Positions 8,785-63,367 of a DNA stretch of 64,000 bases are shown piece after piece. Made by a program: the position numbers and the translations under genes. The stretch spans positions 106,268,001-106,332,000 of the forward strand of contig NC_135656.1 of assembly GCF_964188315.1 (NCBI RefSeq), in the 5' to 3' direction. Source of the stretch: Podarcis muralis. Taxonomy: Eukaryota. A model generated the notes under the pieces. It was not told the DNA's origin. It searched no databases and saw only the letters and a list, made by a program, of their open reading frames with translations. Position 1 is the first letter of the stretch. Every line of letters starts with the position of its first letter.

Positions 8785-9099
8785 AACAGAAGCAAGAACA
8801 AAACAAAACAATAACCTAAACCTCCTACAAACGCACATAAAAAGTCGAAGAGGGAAGTTTTCGCTTGGAGCTTCTCTGGGTAGAGCATTCCACAAATAGA
8901 ATTAACGAGTGCAATGCACATTTGTTTCGGTTTAATCCACAGGTGACAGCACAGAAACACTACTTCAAGGCTTGCATACTATGCCAAGCACTCCTTATTT
9001 CCAGGCAACTATCTCCCAAATTCCATTTAAAAAAGGAAGTTCACATACCTGGGCTGGCTCTGCAGGGCGACGAGGCGAGGAACCCAAACAGCAGCAAGA

Positions 9100-9950
9100 C
9101 CCAGGCTGGAGATTGCAGGGCTCGCTTCTGGCCCCTTCTCACGTGCATGCTGGAAGCAGGGGCACGCGCGGAAAGCGAAAGTAGCTCGCTTTCCCTCCTC
9201 CCGCAGGGGAGATTCCTAGTCCGCAAGGAAGAACCCACGGAGCGACGGCGGAACTCCAGGACACGGTCTCGCCCTCCCTGCGCCGGGATCGCATTTCTGC
9301 ATGCCAAGCGGGTGCTCCCGGGCGACTTTCCCACGCCGCTTCCGTCCGCGCATCCTTGCAGGTGCCTCATTCCAGGATGGGTGCCCTGCCACCCAGGGGT
9401 GGAGAAAGCAATCCGAGCGGCGGCAGCAGCACCAGCTGCAGTTTTCCTGGGCTCCTGGGCTCGCCCGCCCGCCCTCTGCAGCCACTAGGGGAGGCCGTCT
9501 CGGGACGCGGCGGAGGCGAAGGCGAAGGAACCACCCCTCTTCTCTGCGCTCCGCTCCGTCCTCGCCTAGCCTGGAAGGGGCGGCGCCTCGTCCCGCCCCA
9601 GACAATGCCCGCCCCGGCTCGGCCCTCCCCTCGCTTCCCCCACGTGGTCGAGCGCTGGCGATAGACCTTGAGCCTCGCTTCCTGTGTGGCTGTGTGCGCG
9701 CGCGGGCCGCGGAGAGCCCGACCCGAGTGGCGACTGCGGCTCCCCCACCCACGCATCCGGCTTGGATCGATCCCGGGGGTGGCGGAAGGTTCTAAGCCCA
9801 CCCCTCCGAGCGCCTGATCGGGTGAGCAGGGGAAAGGGGGGTGGGGTGGGTTCCTGGTGGCAAACTTGATCCGGAGCGCAAAGTCCCCTTTTACGCACAA
9901 CCACCACCGTCGGCTAGGGGTCCTGGGTGGGGCCCGAGAGGCCTGTACGG
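9100..9950 (+). promoter_or_regulatory. CpG island, probable promoter/first exon of ZNF unit 1
   Basis: Dense CpG and GC-rich sequence; plus-strand donor cgg|gtgagc near 9820; ZF exons lie downstream. Confidence 0.6.
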
Positions 9951-12941: not shown

Positions 12942-13556
12942 ATGGAAGCACCGCCACAGCCAAGAACATCGGGTATAAGGAAGGAGTACCCGTGCCCGGA
13001 GTGCGGGAGGAATTTTAAACGAAACTCTCACCTTGTCCGACATAAACGGCTCCACACGGGCGAAAAGCCTTACAAATGCCCGGAGTGTGGGAAGAGCTTC
13101 CGGCAAAGCACGGATGTTAATACACACAGGAGAATCCACACAGGAGAAACGCCCTTTCACTGCAACCAGTGTGGGAAAAGCTTCCGCTACCGGACGGGTC
13201 TCGTGAAACACGTGAGGGGCCACGAGGAGGAGAAAGCGAAGGCCTGCCGGAGTTGCCTGGAATGCGGGAAAATCATCAGCGGCACTTTAGTCTCCGTTGC
13301 CAGCCAGACGTCCCACGCGGTGGGAAGATCCCATAAATGCCCCGACTGTGAGAAAAACACCCAAGAGAGCTCCCATCTTGTCGTGCACATACCGGGCCGT
13401 GCAACGGAAGAAAACTATATGTGTCCCGACTGCGGAGAAGGGTTTTGCCACAGCTTTCAGCTTATTGGACACAGGAACCTCCACGCCAGTGAGGAAATTC
13501 TGTATTCATCTGTGTTTGTTTCTGGGTCGTACCACTTTGCTCCAAGGGAGCGCTAA
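12942..13556 (+). CDS. C2H2 zinc-finger exon (3 intact fingers, 2 degenerate, 1 near-intact); may be decaying
   Basis: [73 protein letters not shown], then fingers lacking His ligands. An in-frame TAG lies at 12909-12911 upstream of the ATG. Confidence 0.8.
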   Translation: [204 protein letters not shown]

Positions 13557-17103: not shown

Positions 17104-17302
17104 AAACTGCTTTTAAGGTGTTGCAACGGTAATTGCTTTTGGAATGTGTTAATCTGTTTTAGAATGTCCTTGCTTTTGTTTTTAAATTTGCGTATCTGTT
17201 TGCCATTCTGGGTTCCTTGGGGAGGAAGGGCCTGGGTATAAAGTCAAGGGGAGAATAATCGTGGCTGTCATTTCTTTTGTGACCCTGTGATTTCTGTTCC
17301 AG

Positions 17303-17928
17303 CCTGTGATGATGCTGTGCCCACGGAGCGTGAGGAAAAGGACCTCTCATCCCACGAGAGACTTTCTCGGACGTTACTGGGAAGGCTGCAGATACTGGAT
17401 CCCCGAAGGAAAGAGGCCTCTAAGGCCAGGCCCGGCTTCTCCAGGGGGCAGTGGAAACGGCCGGCGGCGAGGGGAAGGGAATCGGCGGAGGACGGGAGTG
17501 CCGCCTCTCCGGTGTGTGAGCGGTTCCTCCGCTCAGAGAGGCGGCACCTCTGCTTCATGTGCGGGAAGAGATTCCGGTACGAGTCCCACCTGGTCACTCA
17601 CGAGCGGATCCACACGGGAGAGAAGCCCTTTGAATGCAGCACCTGCCACAAGAGCTTCCGGGACCGCTCAGACCTGAGCAAGCACCAGAAAACTCACTCG
17701 GCGGACAAACCCTACAAGTGTCTTGACTGCGGCAAAAGCTTTCACCACCAGTTGACCTTTATTAGGCACCAGAGGCTTCATCCCAGGGAGAGCTCCTCCC
17801 GCGATCCGAGCCGGGTGTATTTTGCCATCCTCCCCTCGTACCACGTGGGCGCAGAGATGAGCATTGGGGATGGGACGGAGCCCCCTGAGAGCCTTGGCTT
17901 TCCTTTTAAACAAAAAGTAAGTTTCTAG
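17303..17928 (+). CDS. C2H2 zinc-finger exon (3 fingers) with a strong phase-0 donor at 17916/17917
   Basis: Acceptor tttctgttccag; CFMCGKRFRYESHLVTHERIH, CSTCHKSFRDRSDLSKHQKTH, CLDCGKSFHHQLTFIRHQRLH; AAA|GTAAGT just before the stop. Confidence 0.85.
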
Positions 17929-36988: not shown

Positions 36989-38002
36989 ATGGCGGCTGAG
37001 CTGAAGGAACAGAGATGCGTGAAGGAAGAGCCCGGAACGACGGCGGTGCTGGCGGGCGGCTCGGAAGAGACGGTCTCCCACAGCTGCAAGCGGGAGAGAG
37101 AGAACAGGGGCCGAGACTTGCCAGAGAAGCGAGAGAGAGCTGAGAAAAGCCGAGAAGAAGCTGCTCTGCCACGCAAGGAGCAGGGCTTCGGGAATCTTGA
37201 CCAAATAGTGATCCAGCAGCTGATCCACATTGGAGGAGGCGGGAGGAGGCGCGGCAAGCAGGGGGAGAACTTCCGCCAGGACTCGGGCCTCGGCAAGGCT
37301 TCAATCGTCCGCCTGGGAGAGAAGCCGTACCTGTGCATCGTCTGCGAGAAAACCTTCCGCAACCACTCGGGCCTCATGGTCCACCAGCGGATCCACACGG
37401 GGGAGAAACCCTACAAATGCCCCGATTGCGAAAAGAGCTTCAATCAGCGCTCGCACCTGACCTCCCACCGCGGCACCCACACCGGAGAGAAGCCCTTCAA
37501 GTGCTTTGCCTGCGGGAAGAGCTTCAGCTACAACTCGGGCCTGGTGATCCACCAGCGCATCCACACCGGGGAGAAGCCGTACCAGTGCCCCGGGTGCGAG
37601 AAGAGCTTCAGCCAGAAATCCCACCTGCTGTCGCACCAGAGGACCCACGTGGGGGAGAAGTCCTTCAAGTGCCTGGACTGCGGGAAGAGCTTCAGCTACA
37701 ACTCGGGCCTGGTCATCCACCAGCGCATCCACACCGGGGAGAAGCCGTACGAATGCTCAGACTGCGGGAAGAGCTTCAACCAGCGCTCGCACCTCGTTTC
37801 GCACCGAGGCGTCCACACGGGGCGCAAGCCCTACTCGTGCCGGGATTGCGGGAAGAGCTTCAGCTTCAACTCGGGCCTCGTCATACACCAGCGGCTGCAC
37901 ACGGGGGAGAAGCCTTATGAGTGCTCCGAGTGTGGGAAGAGTTTCAATCAGAAATCACACCTTATTTCACACCAGAGAGTCCATGCCGGGCAAAAGCTCT
38001 GA
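36989..38002 (+). CDS. C2H2 zinc-finger protein, 8 fingers in an alternating A/B pattern (337 aa)
   Basis: Helices NHSGLMV, QRSHLTS, YNSGLVI, QKSHLLS, YNSGLVI, QRSHLVS, FNSGLVI, QKSHLIS; acceptor tctcaacag at 36980. Confidence 0.92.
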   Translation: MAAELKEQRCVKEEPGTTAVLAGGSEETVSHSCKRERENRGRDLPEKRERAEKSREEAALPRKEQGFGNLDQIVIQQLIHIGGGGRRRGKQGENFRQDSGLGKASIVRLGEKPYLCIVCEKTFRNHSGLMVHQRIHTGEKPYKCPDCEKSFNQRSHLTSHRGTHTGEKPFKCFACGKSFSYNSGLVIHQRIHTGEKPYQCPGCEKSFSQKSHLLSHQRTHVGEKSFKCLDCGKSFSYNSGLVIHQRIHTGEKPYECSDCGKSFNQRSHLVSHRGVHTGRKPYSCRDCGKSFSFNSGLVIHQRLHTGEKPYECSECGKSFNQKSHLISHQRVHAGQKL

Positions 38003-47726: not shown

Positions 47727-48676
47727 TCCTCAGGCTGAGTAACAACATGAAGCAGAATTCTCATCGGGAAGTTTCCAGGGTGACGACACTGCAGAATCCT
47801 GAGCCGGGAGAGACTTTGAAGAGCTGCTTGCCTTGTAGATCGGTGAGGCGAATAAATGTGGAGAGATTCGCTGAGTGCTGCCAAGGTTTTAAGACTTGGA
47901 AAGGACCCGGAGTCCATCAGGACCAAGGGGGAAGTAGGAACGCACACGCCGTCTGCGGGCAGAACAGCCGGAAGCATCCGAGACGCAAGGCAGACGAGAG
48001 CCAGAGCCTTTGGAAGTGCCCCGATTGCGGGAAAGGGCTCTCCAATCAAAACGCCTTCAAAAGGCACCAGAAATTCCACACGGGCGAGAAGCCCTACCAA
48101 TGTCGAGAGTGTGGGAAAAGCTTCATGGAGAGCAGCCACCTCACTCAGCACCAGAGGATCCACACGGGGGAGAAACCCTACACGTGTTTGGACTGCGGGA
48201 AAAGGTTCACTCAGATCTCGCACTTCATTCACCACCGGAGGAGCCACACGGGAGAAAAGCCCTACGGCTGCCCCGAGTGCGGGAAAAGCTTCAACTTCAA
48301 GTCGGCTCTGATTCGCCACCACCGGATTCACACGGGAGAGAAGCCGTACGAGTGCCCCTTGTGCAGGAAAAGATTCAACGTCAGCTCCCACCTGGCGAGG
48401 CACCAGAGGAAGCACCTCAAAGAGGCAGCGCTCAAAGCCGTAGAGGGCGTCAGAGGAAACCCGGTCTTTCTTGGGCGCTGCGGAGCACCACGGCCGTACG
48501 ACTGCATGAACTGCGAGAAAGGTTTTTTCCGGAGCGGAGACCTCGTGAGACACCAGAGGATCCACACGGGAGAGAGACCCTATCTGTGTAGCAAATGCGG
48601 GAAGAGCTTCAGCTACAAATCCAGCCGCCTGAGGCATGAGGCAGGACACATACGAGGGGTTGCCCTGAAGCGCTAG
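47727..48676 (+). CDS. KRAB-ZNF terminal exon, 7 C2H2 fingers (5 + spacer + 2); full predicted protein 410 aa
   Basis: Acceptor ttttcccctgcag, phase 1, in frame with the ORF from 47747; canonical fingers and TGEKP linkers. Confidence 0.92.
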
Positions 48677-52640: not shown

Positions 52641-54368
52641 GAACCAAGGTACCACTGTAAATGAGCTTTTAAGGATATCACCTGTAGCTCTGCAGATGTT
52701 GCCGAACTACACCTCTGATCACTGCTTATGCTCGCTGGGGCTGATGGGATTTGGGAGTCCTACAACATCTGGGCGGCCACAGGAAAGCTACCCCTGCTCT
52801 GGCAGCTTCAGGGCGCAATGGCACAACTCTGCTTTCAGACCACCCCATTTCTCACAGCTGTACAGTATCACACCAACCCACACATTCAAACATCATTATT
52901 AGTCTGAGGAAAGCCACAGGTGACATGTGGGGTGGATGGGGGGAGAGAGACAGACCCTGCCCCTATAAAAGGAATACTGCAACAGTGTCTTTTGCCTCTG
53001 GGAAGCAGACAATCAAGGCTGGAAGGCAAGACTTCTTCCCTCTAGGTCCATCCCCATTACTTGGTAAAGGAACGAGCGACAAATAACACAGACACATAAA
53101 GGTCCAGCTTGGGGATACCTGAATGTATTTTGCATTCCAGTGATTTGCTCTTGGTACAGAACCAAGAGAGAGAGATCCCCATAGATACCACGAGGCCCCA
53201 GGCCTTTAACTCGGCTGTAGGAAAAGTGAAGATTCGGAGCAACAAGTTAACCCTTTTTCTAGGCTTTTAAAAAAACAAAAACAAAACCCACACAGAATTA
53301 CATGATTTCTCTATCTTGTGGACAGATGCAAGTAGCGGAAGGGAGGCAAAATTTGGCTGAGCTTGTCGCTACCACACTAGAGGAAACATCCCACAGTACA
53401 TTTCAGAGAGCAATTCAAAGTGTTGGTGCTGACCTTTAAAGTGGCCTAAACGGCCTCAGCCCAGTATACCTGAAAGAGCATCTTCACCTCCATTGTTCTG
53501 CCCAGAAACTGAGATCCAGCTCCGAGCGCCTTCTGGCGTTCCCTCATTGCAAGAAGCGAGGTTACACGGAACCAGGCAGAGGGCCTTCTTGGTAGTGGCG
53601 CCCGCCCTGTGGAACGCCCTCCCATCAGATGTCAAGGAAATACACTCACTATCTGTCTTTTAGAAGACATCTGAAGGCAGCCCTGTTTAGGGAAGTTTTT
53701 AATGTTTGATGTTTTACTGTGTTCTTAATATCCTGTTGGGAGCAACCCAGAGTGGCTGGGGAAACCCAGACAGACGGGCGGGGCATAAATAATAATTTAT
53801 TAGAATAAACTGACTTGCTTTTAGTGTTTAAACCTTCCTGACGGAGCCATTCTCTCACCCCATGTGTGAGGAGGCCTGAGCTGGGTGCTCAGCTGTGTAT
53901 GGTTTTAACCAGCCTCTTTTGCTTCAGACAAGAATGGAGTCTGAAACTAGTGTTTTTTTATATAGCAATTACTTAGGAACTTTTTGCCATTTTGTAACCA
54001 AGCAACATTTTACTGCCTTTGCAACTTTGTTTTTATTGCTGTATGGAAAAGCACATGAATCTGACCTTTGAAGAATTTTGTAAGTAAACCAGTTTATAAC
54101 TTACTAAATGTATGATTGATCTTTGTGCTAGGGAAGCGAGATACTTTGGAGAGAACTATTAAGAAGGGACATTTTGGAATTCATTTGAAAGGGTTTTGAC
54201 ATGTTAAATCTCTGCTGAGGCTCTCCCACCGGAGAGTACTTGCCCCAAAAGTGGGTCTTGGCTTCCAGGGTTGCAACAGTTCCCCCCCTCCTTACTACCC
54301 CCTCCTTTCTGCCCAGCACGGTAACTATATATACTAATGCCCACCCCTCACAAAAGGGGGGGGGATAA

Positions 54369-54964
54369 TTATTTGCTATCCTCCAATTCCAAGAAGTTAC
54401 CCCCTCCACTCTGCTGTGCCTGGCGAGGCTGCCGTTGTATACTGCTTGTCGAACGCAGGACCTCCGCGACGGACACCACGGCGTCAACCATGGGGTGGAG
54501 GATATCCCTTGTGCGCCGAAGCTCCGCCTCAATCATGTTGAGCTCCTTAATCCTAATCTCCCTCTCCAGATGGCTGTCCCTGGCCCTCGCCTCTCTATCC
54601 AGCTGGGCCTCCCTTGCCCTGGCTTCGCGGTCTAGCTGGGCCTCGCGTGTCCGGGCCTCTCTGTCCAGAAGCATCTCCCTCAGCATCGCCTCACGGAACT
54701 CCCCGGCGCTGATCTCGCCCCTCTCGTGAAGCGCCTCCATCGTCTCCCAGGTCCGCCGGTAGTCGGTCATGATCTCGTGCATCATTTCTTCGTGGGACCG
54801 CCTCTTCCTCTCCCGCATGGACGCCATCCTCTCTGCTGTCGTCAGGGGGCGCCCCAGGGAGTTGTCGCGCCTGCCTCTGCCTGAAGGGAGAGGGGAAGCA
54901 AATTGTAATCTCTGGTGATTGCAAAGGTTTTTTTTTACTAATTGCTCATCCCCAGCTGGCACGG
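54369..54964 (-). CDS. Myb/SANT gene terminal exon: coiled coil with 11-aa repeats
   Basis: Acceptor ttctctgccctttgcag (phase 1), alternative in-frame acceptor ccttcag at 54881-54882; ERMASMRERKRR...DREARTREAQL-DREARAREAQL-DREARARDSHL...; AATAAA on the minus strand at 54032-54037. Confidence 0.75.
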
Positions 54965-54983
54965 CTGCAAAGGGCAGAGAATA

Positions 54984-55340
54984 AGGTAAAGGTACCCCTG
55001 CCCGTTCGGGCCAGTCTTGCCAGACTCTAGGGTTGTGCGCTCATCTCACTCTATAGGCCGGGAGCCAGCGCTGTCCGCAGACACTTCCGGGTCACGTGGC
55101 CAGTGTGACAAGCTGCATCTGGCGAGCCAGCGCAGCACACGGAACGCCGTTTACCTTCCCGCTGGTAAGCGGTCCCTATTTATCTACTTGCACCCGGGGG
55201 TGCTTTCGAACTGCTAGGTTGGCAGGCGCTGGGACCGAACGACGGGAGCGCACCCCGCCGCGGGGATTCGAACCGCCGACCATGCGATCGGCAAGTCCTA
55301 GGCGCTGAGGTTTTACCCACAGCGCCACCCGCGTCCCCCT
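54984..55340 (-). mobile_element. Sauria SINE (subfamily B) inserted in the acceptor polypyrimidine tract
   Basis: 13-bp TSD agggcagagaata at 54971-54983 and 55341-55353. Confidence 0.9.
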
Positions 55341-55914
55341 AGGGCAGAGAATAGCAGGTGGCTGGGACTCCAGATTCCCTCTTTCCCTTTGGGTTAATCA
55401 GGGGAGCAGGGATTTACAGAAGCCTGAAGCTTTGCAAAATGTAGAGCAAGCTAGCACTGGGGCTGGGTGCAGGGGTTATAAGATGACTGGCAGGTGGTTT
55501 GGCCCGCTGGGCCAAAACACATTCCCCACCCCTGTGTTATCGAGGGCCTCACTAGAGCCAAAGAGACCCGGGTTCAAGTTCCCCTCAGTCACAATGCTCG
55601 CTGAGTGGCCTTGGGCAAGTCACTGCCCCTCATCCTAAGCTGCATCCATCACATGTCTGTTCTAAGGACGACATGGTATGTAGGAGAGAGCTATGTACTG
55701 AATTCCTTGGAGGAAGAATGGGATAAACATTCAATAAAGAGCCAGTTTCTTGTGCTGATCTTTAACATTGTCAGGAGGAGGCCCCATTCCATCCCCTTGT
55801 TCCTGGATGCCAGGGCCCAGACTGACAATGTCCCACAGAGCAGTATGAAGCACATATGCGCTTGCCTTGAGTTCCAGGACAGGTGGGATATAAAAATAGA
55901 AAAATAATAAAACG

Positions 55915-56095
55915 AAGTAAGAGCTGTTCGACAGTGGAATTTGCTGCCCAGGAGTGTGGTGGAGTCTCCTTCTTTGGAGGTCTTTAAGCAGAGGCTTGAC
56001 AACCATATGTCAGGAGTGCTCTGATGGTGTTTCCTGCTTGGCAGGGGGTTGGACTCGATGGCCCTTGTGGTCTATCCCAACTCTATGATTCTATG
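55915..56095 (+). mobile_element. Young CR1 3' end
   Basis: ...cccaactctatgattctatga; differs from 28801-28941 at only a few positions. Confidence 0.85.
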
Positions 56096-56313
56096 AATAA
56101 CCCTAGTTGTATGCTGCCGTGTGCCACTGGTGGGTGTGCATTAGGTGGCAACACAAGAAAAGGCTGTCTTTGTAGTGGTACACCTGGTGCTGAAACACTG
56201 TTTGCCCAGGCATTTTCAGTGATTCAGGGCTGTGCTAGGGAGCCTGCTCTATGGTTTGCGCTTCCGATTTACAGCTGTTTCGAATGTGATCTTATGGAAT
56301 CTGCATCTCATAC

Positions 56314-56484
56314 CCTGTCCTGGGATCCACTGAGGTGAAGGGAAGGTTGCAAATGCTCTCAATAAAATCGCATCTAAGCCACAGCGGCAATTTTGCTTGG
56401 AAGGGTTTATAATGCCACCAAGCGTCATAATACATCTGCTGTCAATATTCAATGTCATTGGTAGCATAGCTGATATCATATCAC
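56314..56484 (-). CDS. Candidate in-frame cassette exon of the Myb/SANT gene
   Basis: Acceptor ttgattccacag, donor CAGG|gtatga; 171 nt, phase 1-1, no stop. The peptide is not recognisable. Confidence 0.3.
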
Positions 56485-57080
56485 CTGTGGAATCAAGCCC
56501 ACTGAGCTTCTCCCTTTCTGAGAGCCTTTCCCCACCCTCTCAGCCAGCCAAACCCGCCCCACAGACACTTTCCCTCCCGCCTCCATTTTCTGTCCTTCCT
56601 ATACCCCTTGCTTCCTTTTTCTTGCCTGCCTGCCAGCTTATCCCATCATCCAATCAATTTGCCAGGGTGGAGCTGCCCTCGCCCGGAATGAATGCTGATT
56701 GGCTGCAGGGATGAAAATCTAAGCAACCTCCTCCCAGGCTCTTTCAGAGCTTCCCAGGCCCCCTCCCTCTCACATTCTGACCAAAATTGGCCAGACCTAG
56801 ACACACAGCACCATATGGCATTCCCGGCTAACTGGGACGGTTTGCATAGCATCCAACCTTACGCAGGCTCCACTTCCGAGACTAAATTTCACGTCAGTTC
56901 CTCTCTGGCAAGGCACATCTAATTCGGGTCTCTAAACAGGGGGAATTCAGGTCATGCCACCCTACCCCACAAGAGCCCAGAATTGTTCTTGTCGGTTCCC
57001 ACAGCCGGTTGACGCCTCGCCGGCCAAACAGCCATGAGCACCCACAGAAAGGCCACCGCAGCAACACAACATTTGCTCAC

Positions 57081-57720
57081 CAGCCAGAGAATGGTGCCCA
57101 TCTTCGCTGGGGCCAGCCACCGGTTGCCCGTATAAAGGCAGAGATTTGTCACTGGGGCACTCCTCCCCTATTTTGGTTTCAATCACATCCGGGTCGCCGG
57201 CCACCAGCTCTCGCGAGACCCCGAGGTTCGGTTCCGTTTCGGTGTCCGTGTCCATGCTCGAGAGCGTGTTTGGCGGCGTCATCTGGTTGCCCTCCTCTTC
57301 GGAGACCTGCGCCTCCATGTCCTCCGCCTCTTCCGTTTTCACCACCACCCGGGCAGACCCGTCCATGCTCGGCAGGCTCCGGTTCGCCACGCCGTCCATT
57401 TCTCCGCCAAACATCCGGTCCAGCTCTCGGAAGTAGCGGCAGGAAACCGGCTCGGCGCCGGCGCACACCTGCGCGTCCTTGGCTCTCCGGTAGCTGCGCT
57501 TCAGGTCCCGGGCCCGGTTGCGACACTGCGAGGCGTTGCGCTCGTGACCCCTGGCGATCATCTGGGCCGAGAGGTCCTCGTAGATGTCGCTGTTGGGGGG
57601 CCGGTTTTCGATCCACCTGAGAATCAGCAGCTCGCCCCAGAGGGCCAGGAAGTTCCGCGTCTCCATCTCTGACCAAACCGGGGCGCGGGGCTGCAAGCGC
57701 TGGCGCGGCGTATGTGGCAT
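57081..57720 (-). CDS. Myb/SANT-like (trihelix, Myb_DNA-bind_4/MSANTD-type) domain exon
   Basis: WSEMETRNFLALWGE...IYEDLSAQMIARGHERNASQCRNRARDLKRSY...CRYFRELDRMFG followed by an acidic linker; phase-1 donor GCTG|gtgagc. Confidence 0.88.
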
Positions 57721-57899
57721 GCCTGCTTTGGCCTAGCCAGCCCAGGTTTATCAGCACTGGACTCCAGGCAGCTCCAGGTGCCCCCACTACCTGAGAAGTG
57801 CCAAACTTCCCTCAGGAGACCCAGCAAGCCACAGCTGGAGGGAAAGAGCCCACAGCTTGCATGGAAGAGGAAGGCACCAGAAGAAAGCCAAGATGGAAC

Positions 57900-59900
57900 C
57901 TTTTGCACCAGCGAGTGTTCACATGAACAGTTGTTAGTCAGTAGTAACGTCGTGGGCGGAGCTTTGGCCGGGACTTGCAAGGATCTCTTTCGGACACTTG
58001 GCATGGCCAATCCCGCCTCGAGGCGTCACGGCCCCCAACCCACCGAGTGGCTCCTTCCAGGGAGAGGTGGAAGCAGCTGCGCCAGCGAGCCAATAGGCCA
58101 AGCGGAGAGGCGGAGGCGGCGGCGGCTGCTCTGCTGCAAGCAATGGATCCACCCTGCCTTTGCAGACAGGAAAAGGAAGGATTCCCGGCGGCGGCGGCGG
58201 CTTCCCGCACACCCCTTTGCTCGCCTCGTCCGGCTTTGCGCGCTGCAAGCGGTGGGACTCCATCGGAGCGCCTAGCGGAATCTGGGGAGGCTTCTCTCTG
58301 GAGCGCATTGTGCCTCTAAAGGAAAGCTACTGGGTCCTGCCCCCCCTACTCTCTCCAAGCCCCTGGATCTCTTGCTTTTCTTTCTGTGGTCGGGAGCAAG
58401 CAAAGCCATGTCAGCGTAAACATATATTTCAAACAGCGCGAATGTTGACCTTGGAGAACTGCTTGCAATTGCGCCGCTGTTCTCCCCCTGCTGGTTTCGT
58501 TAGAAATCTGCAGAGCTGCAAAAAAAGGACGGGTGCTCGCAAAACAGCAGCGGCAGCCGCCCCTGGATCAGTCCCTGAAAGAGCGTTGAAGAGAAGCTTG
58601 CAAACTCTTGCAGTTGGAAGGAATGCAGCAAATGGTCATGGAGGGCAGCGGGATTGAAGGGGCAGGATCCGTGCACCAGGGCTGCTTGCACATGGCATGG
58701 TGGAATGCTACCATTAATGTGTGGGGAGGAGACGAGGAGTTGGGGGGGGGGATGCCAGTGGGAAGCCGGGTGCCTATGGCTGGTACTGCAAGAGTTTGCA
58801 AGAGATCCCGATCTCCGCCTCGTAGAGTCGCTGATGTTCGCCTTAAAGATTTCTTACTCCGTTCCCCACGATTTTCAGACGCTTTGATTTTGCCCTCCGG
58901 GGGGCGCCCAAGCCCATTTTGTTAAAGCTGCGTTATATATCATATACTATATATCATATACTATTCTCCAATAGTTTAGACCTGGAATTAAAGTTTAGGA
59001 ACCAGCAAACCTCCTAGAACCGCCTGCTAATAACATTGTTTTTTATAGAGACGCCTACCCAGAAATTTAGACTGTTGCTGTGTGTTTTGATCTGTTTTGG
59101 GTTTGTTGCTGGTTTTATTTTTCTGGGTCTTTTAAATTATTGTTAAATCTTTTTACCTTTTCCGTGAATTGCTTCGAGGGTTGTTGTTGTTGTTAGCAGT
59201 GTATATGTTTCTTTAATGAACAAATAAAACATATGGGGCCCCCCCAATCACTATTTTATTTTATTTTATTACTATTTTTAAACCAACCCAGATTCTTCCT
59301 CACCTGCTTGAATGCACCTGAACACCTTTCTCTACCAGCCTGCCCCACACCGGGTGACCTCGGGCCCCCTCACTATCCTTCAGCCTAGCCTACCTCACAG
59401 GGATGTTGTGCGGAGGCTGAAACAGGAAACGGGCGCGCTGATTGGTTGGCTGGCCGCTTGGGCCGGCGTCCCGACGCGCGCCGCGCGACAAACCAGCTCC
59501 GCGAGGTGAGGGTTCGGGCGGCGGCTTCGCTCGGCGGCTCTGAGCATGCTCGCGGGAGCCGGGCATGCTCAGTTAACAACGAGGCATGGGCTCCCTGGAC
59601 CTGCGTCCCGTCCGTAGATGTCGATAGATACAAGTAGATAGGTAGATGGACACGCGAGGGGGCACCATGTGAGTAACGAGCGGCGGGACTGCGTGGGCCC
59701 CGGGCGGAGGCAGGAGACGCGAGGAGGGAGGAGCCCGGGCAGGTCTAGCGACCGCCGCTCCTGCCTCCGACGGGGGACGGCTCAGGCGGAGGGAGGTCGA
59801 GGCGCCCTCTGCTTCGCTGCCTCCCCCTCCAGCGCTGGGTGGGATGGGGATGCTTGCCCTCGGGGGAAGGGAAGCAGCCCCCACGGGCCTGGCTGCTATT
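57900..59900. promoter_or_regulatory. Divergent promoter region with two CpG-rich blocks (about 57900-58300 and 59420-59900)
   Basis: CpG-dense blocks between the Myb/SANT ATG (57720, minus) and the HDAC11 start (59667, plus); CCAAT at about 58090 and ATTGG at about 59441. Confidence 0.65.
59667..59668 (+). CDS. HDAC11: HDAC11 coding exon 1 (split start codon AT|G)
   Basis: gcaccAT|gtgagt; the G at the start of exon 2 completes ATG in frame. Confidence 0.75.
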
Positions 59901-60939: not shown

Positions 60940-61275
60940 GTTAAAGGGACCCCTGACCATTAGGTCCAGTCGTGACCGACTCTGGTGCTCATCTCGCTCT
61001 ATAGGCTGAGGGAGCCGGTGTACAGCTTCCGGGTCATGTGGCCAGCATGACTAAGCCGCTTCTGGCGAACCAGAGCAGTGCATGGAAATGCCATTTACCT
61101 TCCCGCCGGAGTGGTACCTATTTATCTACTTACACTTTGACGTGCTTTCGAACTGCTAGGTTGGCAGGAGCAGGGACCAAGCAACGGGAGCTCACCCCAT
61201 TGCGGGGATTCGAACCGCCGATCTTCTGATCGGCAAGTCCTAGTCTCTGTGGTTTAACCCACAGCGGCACCCGCG
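60940..61275 (-). mobile_element. Sauria SINE (subfamily A) in HDAC11 intron 1
   Basis: Reverse-complement full-length copy. Confidence 0.9.
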
Positions 61276-62054
61276 GCACTCTTTCTAATATTATCCCAGT
61301 CATGTAAAATACAGTACTTAATTCTAAATTAAAAGTTTTAAAATTAAAAATGTTCATTTTTGGAGTGAACCCTGTGATATGACTCTCACATTCTGTGTTG
61401 TTCTAAGTGACAGAAATCAAATTAAGGCTGCAGTCTTGTGCACTGTTACAAGAGAGTAAATTACATTGCTCAGTGGGACTTTTGAGTGATATGCATAGAG
61501 TTGTGCTCTAAAATGCTTGCATTTTCTATTATATCAATTGGAACAATAATCTGTAATGAAATTTCCTGAATGGGAATTGATTTTAATTCAGGCAGGCAAA
61601 ATACTATACATATTTATTTATTACAGTACTGTTTTGCCTCAGCTTTCAATCTTTTCTTACGCCCTCAGTTTTGATTAGGAATGGCCAGTCATACCATGTC
61701 TCCCAGATACACAACTTAGCACTTCGTGTTCTTATAAGAGGATTAGACAAGTTCCAGGAGGACAAGGTTTTCTATGGGCCCCTTACAACTCTACAGTTCT
61801 ATGAATACCAGGAGGGGAGAGTGCTGTTGAACTCATGTCCGCTGTAAGAACAGGATGCTAAACTAGATCATTGGCCTGATCCAGCAGGTTCCTGTTATGT
61901 TCTCATGTTTAGGGAGGAGCTATATATTACAATTGGCAGTTGGGCCAATTAACGTGAAATTATAATACATTTGGCTCCTGTCCTCTGAGCTAAAAAAACA
62001 GCATGAAGGATGTGAGGACATCAGGGACAGGTAGGAGCCATATGTGTAGCTATT

Positions 62055-62195: not shown

Positions 62196-62638
62196 ACTCT
62201 GCTGCTATCTAGTCTTCATGTGCAAAGTCTCTTGCCACATTCTACAGTCCCACGTGTGCAAGCTGCTCCCGCCAGCTGCGCTCATTGGCTTTGCATGGCC
62301 AGAGCCAAGTGGGCTGGGCGGATTGGTTGGCACTTCCAGCAGTGGGTGACCAAAGACAAGAGGCCTTTTCTGAAGGCTGCTTGAGATGTAAGAGGGTGGC
62401 TTTCCCAGCCCAGAATGCCTCCTGTGCCCAACAAAGCTACAAGCAATGACATTTGGTAGTACTGGATAGTTTGGTTTGGCCTCCCTCACTTTTGATCTCT
62501 TATAATGAATGGTATTATGCCTGTTATGCATTCCACGTCTGGTGCTCCGGAGGGCAAAAGAATAACTGGAAAAAGAATATTCTTGTCTATGTTGCGTTAC
62601 ATAATTTGGGCACATTTATGTGGAATGTATTTAATAAT

Positions 62639-62639
62639 A

Positions 62640-62676
<37 letters not shown>
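62639..62676. repeat. (GAT)n microsatellite
   Basis: Read directly from the sequence. Confidence 0.95.
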
Positions 62677-62677
<1 letters not shown>

Positions 62678-62818
62678 AATTTTAAAAAAAATTATTTATA
62701 TCCTGCTCTCCCCAGCCAAAGCCGGACTCAGAGTGGCTAACAACAATAAAAGTAACACAGTTTACAGTTTTCTCCTTTTTGGTATTTGGATATCTGATGT
62801 TGTTACTGTTTCTGTTAG

Positions 62819-62967
62819 GCCTCACAGGACAGAACTCTACCACGACATCCCGCCAACATGCTGGCCGATTGTGTATTCTCCAGATTACAATATTACATTC
62901 ATGGGACTGGAGAAACTACATCCATTCGATGCTGGAAAATGGGGGAAAGTAATAAATTTTTTGAAAG
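62819..62967 (+). CDS. HDAC11: HDAC11 coding exon 2
   Basis: PHRTELYHDIPPTCWPIVYSPDYNITFMGLEKLHPFDAGKWGKVINFLK, the HDAC11 N-terminus; AG/GT boundaries; 149 nt. Confidence 0.97.
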
Positions 62968-63367
62968 GTAAAGTGCGTGCCGAACGGAAAGTCTCAAGCT
63001 TTGTAGAAATTGTGTTGTGTCAGTATTCTGTAAAAAGCCAACCTGCAAGAAGTAATTCCATGTAGATAGTTACTGATGTGTGCAGCAGTTATGATTACTT
63101 TGGTATTTTTATTGTATTTTATATGGACGATTAGTATGCCTTCTGTGTGTTAGATCTGCAGTTCTGCACTGCCTGAAAAGCAGCAGTGGTATAGCCATCG
63201 GTCCTGAATAAACTATCGTTTCCTGCTTAGTGCGCAATGGAGTTTACAGCAAAGCAGAAGCCTAATTTAGTAATGGAAAATCCTATGTGCTGTCTTCTGC
63301 AGGATTGAAATGTGTGCCTTATTTACATGAGATGTTGGATGTAATGTGCTTTTCTTTTTCAATTCAG

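What the first reader, a model, noticed from the sequence alone, without database searches (positions are those of the whole stretch)
54369..59900. Apparently domesticated Harbinger-type Myb/SANT gene head-to-head with HDAC11
Seen: a spliced, stop-free minus-strand gene (about 383-411 aa depending on acceptor) with an N-terminal trihelix/Myb-SANT domain, an acidic linker and a C-terminal coiled coil. Its ATG lies about 1.9 kb from the HDAC11 start codon, in divergent orientation across CpG-rich DNA. No Harbinger transposase ORF, flanking TIRs or TWA target duplication were seen in the window. Known: this architecture is that of the PIF/Harbinger accessory DNA-binding protein and its domesticated derivatives (NAIF1, MSANTD family). 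In Arabidopsis, Harbinger-derived SANT proteins act inside chromatin complexes (HDA6 with HHP1/SANT1-4; ALP1/ALP2 with PRC2). Inference: this could be a squamate-specific domesticated Myb/SANT factor co-regulated with a class IV HDAC, possibly a DNA-targeting partner.
Basis: partly seen in the sequence, partly recalled or inferred. Interest (0 to 1): 0.72.

Follow-up and report, generated by a model that had tools for sequence, protein, structure and literature searches.

The report
Tamed Harbinger Myb gene beside HDAC11
This is a real two-exon lizard gene, descended from the DNA-binding helper gene of a Harbinger jumping element and kept almost unchanged in lizards and snakes, but nothing here shows that it works with its neighbour HDAC11.

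Summary
On the minus strand, exon 1 (57720-57081) and exon 2 (54880-54372) encode a 383-aa protein identical to NCBI's model for Podarcis muralis LOC114592113. It has an N-terminal Myb_DNA-bind_4 (trihelix) domain, an acidic disordered linker, a basic motif and long C-terminal helices. One such gene is annotated per species in about 35 squamates, from geckos to snakes. Mean column identity is 89% and dN/dS is 0.05-0.12 (0.01-0.02 in the Myb domain).

The Harbinger origin is well supported. The nearest proteins with the same layout include Myb genes that lie beside DDE_Tnp_4 transposase ORFs. One sits in a three-copy, 99.9%-identical 11.4-kb gecko element with TIRs and 3-bp target duplications; another sits in a turtle. 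They share the second motif and the intron position. The window has no transposase.

No full-length relative was found outside squamates. A sister paralogue sits in the PPP2R3C locus.

The HDAC11 link is weak:
- The two genes have separate CpG islands and separately conserved promoter blocks.
- ATG-to-ATG spacing is 1.9-9.2 kb across species.
- Three geckos have no HDAC11 within 10 kb.

Verdict: a new, undescribed member of a known kind (NAIF1/MSANTD-like domestications).

The parts
57081..57720 (-). Coding exon 1 (ATG at 57720; 213 codons plus 1 base): Myb domain and acidic linker
   Evidence: ORF and splice donor. Identical to residues 1-213 of P0179. The mRNA contig L008 aligns up to this boundary.
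57412..57678 (-). Myb_DNA-bind_4 (trihelix) DNA-binding domain, aa 15-103
   Evidence: Pfam E 1.7e-16. The PDB profile hit is the GT-1 trihelix 2JMW, E 1e-3. Nearly invariant across 12 squamates. dN/dS 0.01-0.02.
57082..57405 (-). Acidic, disordered linker, aa 106-213
   Evidence: 24 D+E against 6 K+R. pLDDT about 30. dN/dS 0.08-0.18.
54881..57080 (-). Single intron (GT...AG) carrying a tRNA-like SINE.
54372..54880 (-). Coding exon 2 (169 codons plus 2 bases of the split Gly codon); stop at 54369-54371
   Evidence: Identical to residues 215-383 of P0179. Matches orthologs. The L008 junction falls here.
54768..54848 (-). Motif 2: a basic RxRKRR cluster (a likely nuclear-localisation or partner-binding site) followed by an EEMMxEIM-type helix start
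   Evidence: Invariant in squamates. Shared with single-Myb Harbinger-type proteins but not with multi-Myb SCAN/KRAB proteins.
54435..54839 (-). Two long C-terminal helices (coiled-coil candidate)
   Evidence: AlphaFold2 helices 230-268 and 274-364 at pLDDT 85-97, in P0001 numbering.
54577..54644 (-). 33-nt (11-residue) tandem repeat inside the helical region
   Evidence: Tandem Repeats Finder: period 33, 2.1 copies.
57790..58220 (-). Conserved non-coding block just upstream of the ATG: the gene's own 5'UTR and core promoter
   Evidence: 73-79% identity to the same position in gecko, boa, Pogona and Anolis loci. The L008 5'UTR is colinear up to about 57981.
53835..53861 (-). Short conserved element in the 3'UTR
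   Evidence: 27 nt at 89% identity to the 3'UTR of mRNA contig L008.
59400..59800 (+). HDAC11 CpG island, with the start codon at 59667 followed directly by a GT donor
   Evidence: CpG observed/expected 1.0-1.1. Sequence read. Positions 59523-59573 are conserved beside the Pogona HDAC11 CDS start.
62823..62972 (+). HDAC11 coding exon 2
   Evidence: ORF translation. 92% identical to the exon in Pogona locus L012, whose gene carries PF00850.

Best explanation
This is a bona fide host gene (Podarcis muralis LOC114592113). It arose before the radiation of living squamates by domestication of the Myb-like (trihelix) accessory gene of a PIF/Harbinger DNA transposon.

Shown:
- It is one annotated gene per species.
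- It is intact and of nearly constant length (383-386 aa) in about 35 squamates.
- It is under strong purifying selection.
- It has lost the transposase.
- It is spliced into mRNA in at least one squamate.
- It keeps the two-motif layout and the intron position of Myb genes carried by live Harbinger elements.

Inferred mechanism: it acts as a nuclear, sequence-specific DNA-binding adaptor. The trihelix domain would bind DNA. The basic RKRR motif would serve nuclear import or partner contact. The long C-terminal helices would self-associate or dock a partner protein, as Harbinger Myb-like proteins do with their transposase and as NAIF1 does with HARBI1. In this way it would bring a regulatory or chromatin activity to defined sites.

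Its position head-to-head with HDAC11 is most simply inherited microsynteny, with two separate promoters.
For: Gene model and identity to XP_028575846.2.

Myb_DNA-bind_4 domain. GT-1 trihelix as nearest solved structure.

Orthologs, one LOC per species, in lacertids, Varanus, anoles, agamids, phrynosomatids, six geckos, Rhineura, Tiliqua, Elgaria, Hemicordylus and many snakes.

dN/dS of 0.05-0.12 overall and 0.01-0.02 in the Myb domain, with dS about 1.

Intron-less 385-aa ORF in Logan contig L008, with the junction mapping to 57081|54880.

Harbinger link:
- P0136 (gecko) lies in an 11.36-kb element present three times at 99.9% identity, with a ~13-nt TIR, 3-bp target duplications (TTA in L006) and a convergent DDE_Tnp_4 ORF.
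- Turtle P0057 has the same Myb plus DDE pairing.
- hhalign of the squamate gene against these single-Myb proteins gives 99.8% probability over columns 10-254, including motif 2.
- Motif 2 is confined to single-Myb proteins.
- The intron before motif 2 falls at the same or nearly the same aligned position.

No transposase and no SCAN exon in the window.

Helices and disorder.
Against: - The source Harbinger lineage is not resolved. On the 100-column domain tree the gene and its paralogue sit on a long branch, and the tool warns of long-branch joins.
- No TIR remnants were sought systematically, and none are expected after about 200 My.
- Expression in this species is only suggested: 12 runs hold 0.40-0.44 of the words, about the exonic share, and none is on record as RNA.
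- DNA binding, nuclear localisation, oligomerisation and any partner are untested inferences.
- Absence from tuatara and other outgroups rests on annotated proteins, not on genome searches.
Confidence: 0.8

Rival explanations
1. One reading: the protein is co-regulated with HDAC11 from a shared divergent promoter and serves as a DNA-targeting partner of this class IV deacetylase. This would parallel the Arabidopsis HDA6-HHP1-SANT1-4 complex.
For: The head-to-head order with a PF00850 gene holds in the window (1.95 kb), Pogona (4.45 kb), Anolis (6.3 kb) and Candoia (9.2 kb). Harbinger-derived Myb proteins do sit in HDAC, HAT and PRC2 complexes in plants (PMC9392472).
Against: There are two separate CpG islands with a mostly CpG-poor spacer. 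Each gene has its own conserved promoter-proximal block at a fixed distance from its own ATG, while the spacer varies almost five-fold. By homology the TSSs lie at least about 1.4 kb apart. In Eublepharis, Gekko and Paroedura no HDAC11 exon lies within 10 kb; a same-strand gene lies upstream instead. The Myb gene is just as conserved there. There are no expression or interaction data.
Confidence: 0.07
2. The gene did not come directly from a transposon. It arose by duplication of a Myb exon from an older host gene of the ZSCAN20/ZSCAN29/ZKSCAN2-like type, which is abundant in reptile zinc-finger clusters such as the one that fills 12.9-48.7 kb of this window.
For: The highest summed scores after the orthologs go to multi-Myb SCAN/KRAB proteins. 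A C2H2 zinc-finger cluster lies next door. One Ensembl cobra model fuses a SCAN box to exon 1.
Against: Per-domain scores of those proteins (70-77 bits) are no better than those of transposon-borne Myb proteins (82 bits for turtle P0057). They lack motif 2 and the C-terminal module, which the gene shares with single-Myb Harbinger-type proteins. There is no SCAN exon in the window, and the zinc-finger genes are on the other strand.
Confidence: 0.08
3. It is an ordinary, recently inserted or decaying Harbinger copy whose Myb ORF happens to be open.
For: Its family is that of live Harbinger Myb genes.
Against: One annotated gene per species in about 35 species, with the same conserved upstream block in the six loci compared. 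Amino-acid identity of 80-89% between geckos and snakes, with synonymous sites saturated. No transposase within 10 kb in any of seven loci examined (gene tables).
Confidence: 0.01

Closest known systems
Harbinger transposon Myb-like accessory protein (here: P0136 in an active 11.4-kb leopard-gecko element; P0057 in a painted-turtle element)
   Same: N-terminal Myb_DNA-bind_4 domain, acidic linker, RxRKRR/EEMxxEhM motif, helical tail, similar size (347-368 against 383 aa), and an intron just before motif 2.
   Different: About 33-37% identity in the domain. The window gene has no transposase partner, no detected TIRs and no other copies, and it evolves under strong constraint.
NAIF1 and MSANTD1-4 (vertebrate genes domesticated from Harbinger Myb-like genes; PMC9392472)
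   Same: The same kind of event: a Harbinger Myb-like ORF kept as a syntenic host gene under negative selection, and predicted to be a DNA- and protein-binding factor.
   Different: Those genes date to the base of jawed vertebrates or sarcopterygians and occur in all tetrapods. This gene was found only in squamates, and it has a different length and C-terminus. NAIF1, MSANTD3 and MSANTD4 were grouped by that paper with a different set of Harbinger Myb-like proteins from MSANTD1 and MSANTD2; that they belong to another Pfam family (Myb_DNA-bind_5) is from my own knowledge and was not tested here.
Squamate paralogue nested in the PPP2R3C locus (P0033/P0169 of Rhineura; relatives in Podarcis, Tiliqua, Hemicordylus, Heteronotia, Elgaria, Lerista)
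   Same: 52% identity in the Myb domain, end-to-end colinearity including motif 2 and the helical tail, the same intron position at the Gly before R-[GS]-RRD, and a sister clade at SH-aLRT 99.
   Different: Different locus. It is longer (about 460 aa of its own). NCBI models splice it to PPP2R3C 5' exons. It is less conserved (76-81% across squamates).
Arabidopsis SANT1-4/HHP1-HDA6, ALP2/ALP1-PRC2 and HDP2/HDP1-HAT complexes
   Same: Harbinger-derived Myb proteins that act as DNA-binding subunits of chromatin-modifying complexes (PMC9392472). They are a model for how this protein could work.
   Different: Independent plant domestications. There is no evidence here of any complex, and the HDAC involved there is class I (HDA6), not class IV.
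ZSCAN20 / ZSCAN29 / ZKSCAN2-like proteins
   Same: They carry the same Pfam domain; automatic names of fragments of this gene borrow theirs.
   Different: They have SCAN and/or KRAB boxes and two to eight Myb repeats, and they lack motif 2 and the coiled coil.

Membership tests
Pfam Myb_DNA-bind_4 (trihelix/SANT-like) domain proteins | Match to PF13837 above the gathering score | tested here: met
   60.8 bits against a cutoff of 27, E 1.7e-16, profile positions 3-89 of 89.
Pfam Myb_DNA-bind_4 (trihelix/SANT-like) domain proteins | Three-helix fold like plant GT-1 | tested here: inconclusive
   The profile hits GT-1 2JMW/2EBI at E 1e-3. AlphaFold2 gives helices 18-38, 46-56, 60-86 and 95-104, but at pLDDT of only 50-74. 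No fold search was run.
PIF/Harbinger Myb-like accessory gene lineage | Homology, beyond the Myb domain, to Myb genes that sit in elements with a DDE_Tnp_4 transposase, TIRs and 3-bp target duplications | tested here: met
   Gecko element. Turtle pair. hhalign 99.8% over columns 10-254. Motif 2 distribution. Intron position.
Active or relic Harbinger transposon copy | Transposase ORF, TIRs, TWA duplication, multiple copies | tested here: not met
   No DDE_Tnp_4 similarity in the window or in L001-L003, and none annotated in L011-L013. One LOC per species. TIRs and target duplications were not searched for systematically.
Domesticated (host) gene | Orthologous position across species | tested here: met
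   The same conserved upstream block and exon structure occur in six loci. HDAC11 is the neighbour in four non-gecko lineages.
Domesticated (host) gene | Purifying selection (dN/dS far below 1) | tested here: met
   0.05-0.12 per exon and 0.01-0.02 in the Myb domain, by Nei-Gojobori over 10 species pairs. dS is near saturation, so the ratios are approximate.
Domesticated (host) gene | Spliced transcript | tested here: inconclusive
   Met in another squamate: L008 is an intron-less contig with UTRs. In this species there is only a word share of 0.40-0.44 in 12 runs of guessed RNA type.
MSANTD1-4 / NAIF1 orthologs | Presence across jawed vertebrates (or sarcopterygians) at their own syntenic loci | tested here: not met
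   Full-length matches occur only in squamates among 5.8 billion and 1.84 billion proteins. None of the 20 nearest non-orthologous hits looked up carries those names. No named MSANTD sequence was compared directly.
Bidirectional-promoter gene pair | Divergent TSSs less than about 1 kb apart in one shared CpG island | tested here: not met
   The ATGs are 1,947 bp apart. The 5'UTR reaches about 57981 by homology. There are two CpG islands with a mostly CpG-poor gap. Spacing is 4.45-9.2 kb in other species. The true TSSs were not measured.
ZSCAN20/29-type SCAN zinc-finger proteins | SCAN box and C2H2 fingers in the same gene | tested here: not met
   No SCAN similarity in the window. The C2H2 exons are on the opposite strand.

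The most novel reading that the evidence does not exclude
The protein is the sequence-specific targeting subunit of HDAC11, the only class IV deacetylase, whose recruitment to chromatin is poorly understood. On this reading the linkage of the two genes in non-gecko squamates reflects co-regulation, and it would be an animal counterpart of the plant HDA6-HHP1-SANT complex. A softer version: together with its PPP2R3C-nested paralogue it forms a squamate-only pair of Harbinger-derived regulators that work with a domesticated Harbinger transposase of the same genome.
Probability: 0.08. Interest if true: 0.8.

Novelty: new member of a known kind. Interest (0 to 1): 0.45.

Why it matters
Domesticated Harbinger Myb-like genes are known in vertebrates only as the ancient NAIF1 and MSANTD1-4 set. 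This gene adds a younger, lineage-restricted case and, with its PPP2R3C-nested sister, a small squamate gene family. Its Myb domain is among the most conserved sequences one could ask for: about 98% identical between geckos and snakes. The gene is catalogued only as 'uncharacterized LOC' in about 35 genomes, and I found no paper on it. Live Harbinger elements carrying closely comparable Myb genes still exist in geckos and turtles, so the step from transposon gene to host gene can be compared directly. The suggested HDAC11 link would be of wider interest, but the present evidence does not favour it.

Tried and rejected

They lie in the intron. Disclosure: the local tblastn still used the whole window as its subject. 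No query was built from those letters and no hit fell there.

Exon joining. Each exon was searched by reference and compared with the database protein P0179.

Family and structure searches.
- NCBIfam gave only noise.
- A PDB sequence search gave only the GT-1 domain.
- Structure searches were not run, because the Myb part of the model has low confidence and the rest is plain helices.

Look-ups and earlier notes.
- The context look-up for P0033 failed; its longer isoform P0169 worked.
- Findings searches by place and by sequence were blank.
- A search for 'HDAC11' with 'bidirectional promoter' gave nothing relevant.

Tree. The domain tree (100 columns) cannot say which Harbinger lineage was the source.

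Rejected match. A 30-nt match of the HDAC11-side spacer to gecko locus L002 looks like a shared SINE fragment and was not taken as synteny.

Outgroups.

Full report
WHAT IS THERE

On the minus strand an ORF starts at the ATG at 57720 and runs to a GTGAGC donor at 57080. A pyrimidine tract ending in CAG at 54881 opens a second exon, 54880-54372, which ends with TAA at 54371-54369. The split codon reads GGC.

Each was handled by reference. Both are letter-for-letter identical to the two parts of the database protein P0179 (XP_028575846.2, 'uncharacterized protein LOC114592113', Podarcis muralis, 383 aa). The window is therefore wall-lizard DNA and the 383-aa model is NCBI's current one.

No ortholog model uses it, and the natural mRNA contig does not either.

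ANATOMY OF THE PROTEIN

- Residues 15-103 match Pfam Myb_DNA-bind_4 at E 1.7e-16.
- The only solved structure that a profile of the family reaches is the plant GT-1 trihelix domain.
- Residues 106-213 are acidic (24 D+E, 6 K+R) and predicted disordered.
- Exon 2 opens with an invariant basic motif (RxRKRR followed by EEMMxEIM).
- Exon 2 then forms two long helices (230-268 and 274-364, pLDDT 85-97).
- Those helices contain an 11-residue (33-nt) tandem repeat.

IT IS A CONSERVED HOST GENE

A word-based search found full-length relatives of 375-386 aa only in squamates. Cluster look-ups list one LOC per species in about 35 species:
- five lacertids;
- Varanus;
- anoles, Sceloporus and Phrynosoma;
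- Pogona and Phrynocephalus;
- six geckos;
- the amphisbaenian Rhineura;
- Tiliqua, Elgaria and Hemicordylus;
- boas, vipers, elapids and colubrids.

Mean column identity in a 12-species alignment is 89%, and the first 100 residues are almost invariant.

I made exon-wise codon alignments of the window, Anolis, Eublepharis, Candoia and a Logan contig. They give dN/dS of 0.05-0.08 (exon 1) and 0.06-0.12 (exon 2). The Myb domain gives 0.01-0.02 and the linker 0.08-0.18. dS is about 1, so these ratios are approximate, but pN is far below pS throughout.

Logan contig L008 (1,655 nt, run SRR12656980) carries an uninterrupted 385-aa ORF with UTRs. Its junction maps exactly to 57081|54880, and its 5'UTR is colinear with the window up to about 57981. 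So a spliced mRNA exists in at least one squamate.

For the wall lizard itself the evidence is thinner. Twelve runs of guessed RNA type hold 0.40-0.44 of the sampled words, roughly the exonic share of about 0.37.

One local tblastn still had the whole window as its subject. I state that openly.

WHERE IT CAME FROM

A profile search of 1.84 billion representatives gave one full-length cluster, the orthologs. After that came two kinds of partial match.

1. Long reptile and fish proteins with two to eight Myb_DNA-bind_4 repeats, often with SCAN or KRAB boxes.
2. A swarm of single-domain proteins of 200-450 aa, mostly from turtles and lizards.

Two of the second kind were placed in their genomes.

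- P0136 of the leopard gecko occurs at three loci. Each lies inside an 11.36-kb element that is 99.9% identical between loci. The element is bounded by a ~13-nt inverted repeat (GGCTGAATCCACA-type) and 3-bp duplications (TTA at L006). It carries a convergent ORF matching DDE_Tnp_4 at E 7e-31. This is a live Harbinger.
- P0057 of the painted turtle is likewise followed by a convergent DDE_Tnp_4-like ORF, 43% identical to the gecko one.

The squamate gene aligns with this single-Myb family at 99.8% probability over columns 10-254. That span covers the Myb domain, the linker and motif 2.

A motif-2 profile finds convincing hits only in single-Myb proteins and in the paralogue family. The few hits in multi-Myb proteins score about zero (i-E of 6.7 or worse).

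The intron before motif 2 falls at the same Gly in the paralogue. In the gecko element's Myb gene it lies within about two aligned residues of that position, and in the turtle gene it lies in the same short interval.

Per-domain scores also put transposon-borne proteins (82 bits) at least level with SCAN-type repeats (70-77 bits).

The window has no transposase similarity and no SCAN exon. Direct descent from a Harbinger Myb-like gene is therefore the best reading. Descent from a ZSCAN20/29-type host gene is disfavoured but not excluded.

The domain tree cannot name the source lineage. The gene sits on a long branch, and the tool warns about that.

A SISTER GENE

The best single-domain match outside the orthologs (101 bits, 52% identity) is P0033 of Rhineura. 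It is colinear end to end, including motif 2 and the helical tail. It lies in the PPP2R3C locus, next to PRORP. NCBI models splice it to the first two PPP2R3C exons.

Relatives at 67-81% identity, almost all with the same 'PPP2R3C isoform' label, occur in Podarcis, Tiliqua, Hemicordylus, Heteronotia, Elgaria and Lerista. The two families are sisters (SH-aLRT 99). Squamates thus have a two-member family from one domestication plus a duplication, or from two captures of one element family.

THE HDAC11 QUESTION

A 'caccATgtgagt' start lies at 59667, 1,947 bp from the Myb ATG, and HDAC11 exon 2 follows at 62823-62972.

A PF00850 gene is also head-to-head in Pogona (4.45 kb), Anolis (6.3 kb) and Candoia (9.2 kb).

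Four observations argue against a shared promoter.
- The window has two CpG islands (57200-57600 and 59400-59800) separated by a stretch (58600-59400) that is mostly CpG-poor.
- A 430-nt block at 57790-58220 is conserved at 73-79% in all six loci at a fixed distance from the Myb ATG. The HDAC11 side has its own small conserved block near its own start. The spacer between them is not conserved and varies almost five-fold.
- By homology the TSSs are at least about 1.4 kb apart.
- In three geckos no HDAC11 exon lies within 10 kb. A same-strand gene without Pfam domains lies upstream instead, shared by Eublepharis and Gekko. The gene is as conserved there as anywhere.

Conserved neighbourhood over this depth is common and needs no functional link. 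The plant precedents are real: HDA6-HHP1-SANT1-4, ALP1/2-PRC2 and HDP1/2-HAT (PMC9392472). They show what such proteins can do, but they are analogies, not evidence.

HOW IT MOST LIKELY WORKS (INFERENCE)

The protein would be nuclear. Its trihelix domain would bind a specific DNA motif. Its helical tail would self-associate or hold a partner. [quoted passage not shown] It is also the job of NAIF1 with HARBI1 (PMC9392472).

Candidate partners include HARBI1. They also include the domesticated Harbinger transposases that earlier notes of this scan report in the same genome (s1-179013, s1-180230). I did not check those notes.

COMPARISON AND NOVELTY

The event is of the NAIF1/MSANTD kind, but the gene is not one of those. 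They occur in all jawed vertebrates or sarcopterygians at other loci. This gene was found only in squamates.

The MSANTD paper mentions no lizard, squamate or HDAC11-linked gene, and my other searches found no paper on it. It is annotated but uncharacterised. I rate it a new member of a known kind, of moderate interest.

Noticed in passing
window 12942-48676, + strand: At least five large C2H2 zinc-finger exons lie at 12942-13556, 17287-17928, 29366-30283, 36989-38002 and 47747-48676. They form a tandem zinc-finger gene cluster that converges on the 3' end of the Myb gene. No SCAN exon was detected in the window.
   Followed up: partly
L010:23282-25498 (Rhineura floridana, PPP2R3C locus): A sister paralogue with the same architecture and intron position is nested in PPP2R3C. 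NCBI models splice it to PPP2R3C exons 1-2 in several squamates. It may be a genuine host-transposon fusion transcript or a chimeric gene model.
   Followed up: partly
L004:5031-16382 (also L005, L006; Eublepharis macularius): An unusually long (11.36 kb) Harbinger element, apparently active, is present in three copies at 99.9% identity. Besides the four-exon Myb gene and the DDE_Tnp_4 ORF it holds a second Myb_DNA-bind_4 ORF on the other strand (8897-9295, E 1.2e-12) and a 49-nt perfect palindrome at 13108-13205.
   Followed up: partly
window 55100-55340 and 61040-61360: Two copies of a tRNA-like SINE, each with a GGTTCGAATCC-type box. One lies in the Myb gene's intron and the other in HDAC11 intron 1. 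Both give spurious ORFs in both frames.
   Followed up: no
window 54881-54964, - strand: An in-frame alternative acceptor lies 84 nt upstream of the one used. It would add 28 residues. No ortholog model or mRNA contig uses it.
   Followed up: yes
L009 (Logan contig, run SRR22184594): A 992-nt contig of unknown species carries residues 73-211 of exon 1 at 72% identity and then reads on without exon 2. It is probably genomic DNA of a divergent squamate. The organism could not be determined.
   Followed up: no
P0037, P0041, P0064 (turtle Ensembl models): 'SCAN box domain-containing' turtle proteins carry a Myb domain that clusters tightly (SH-aLRT 99) with the transposon-borne turtle protein P0057. 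Either SCAN genes repeatedly capture Harbinger Myb exons, or these gene models run into transposon copies.
   Followed up: no
window about 62600-62700: A trinucleotide microsatellite in HDAC11 intron 1 reads as runs of Asp or Met in two frames.
   Followed up: no
L002:5642-6046 and L011:2650-3065 (geckos): In geckos a same-strand gene without Pfam domains, conserved between Eublepharis and Gekko at 73%, occupies the place upstream of the Myb gene where other squamates have HDAC11.
   Followed up: partly
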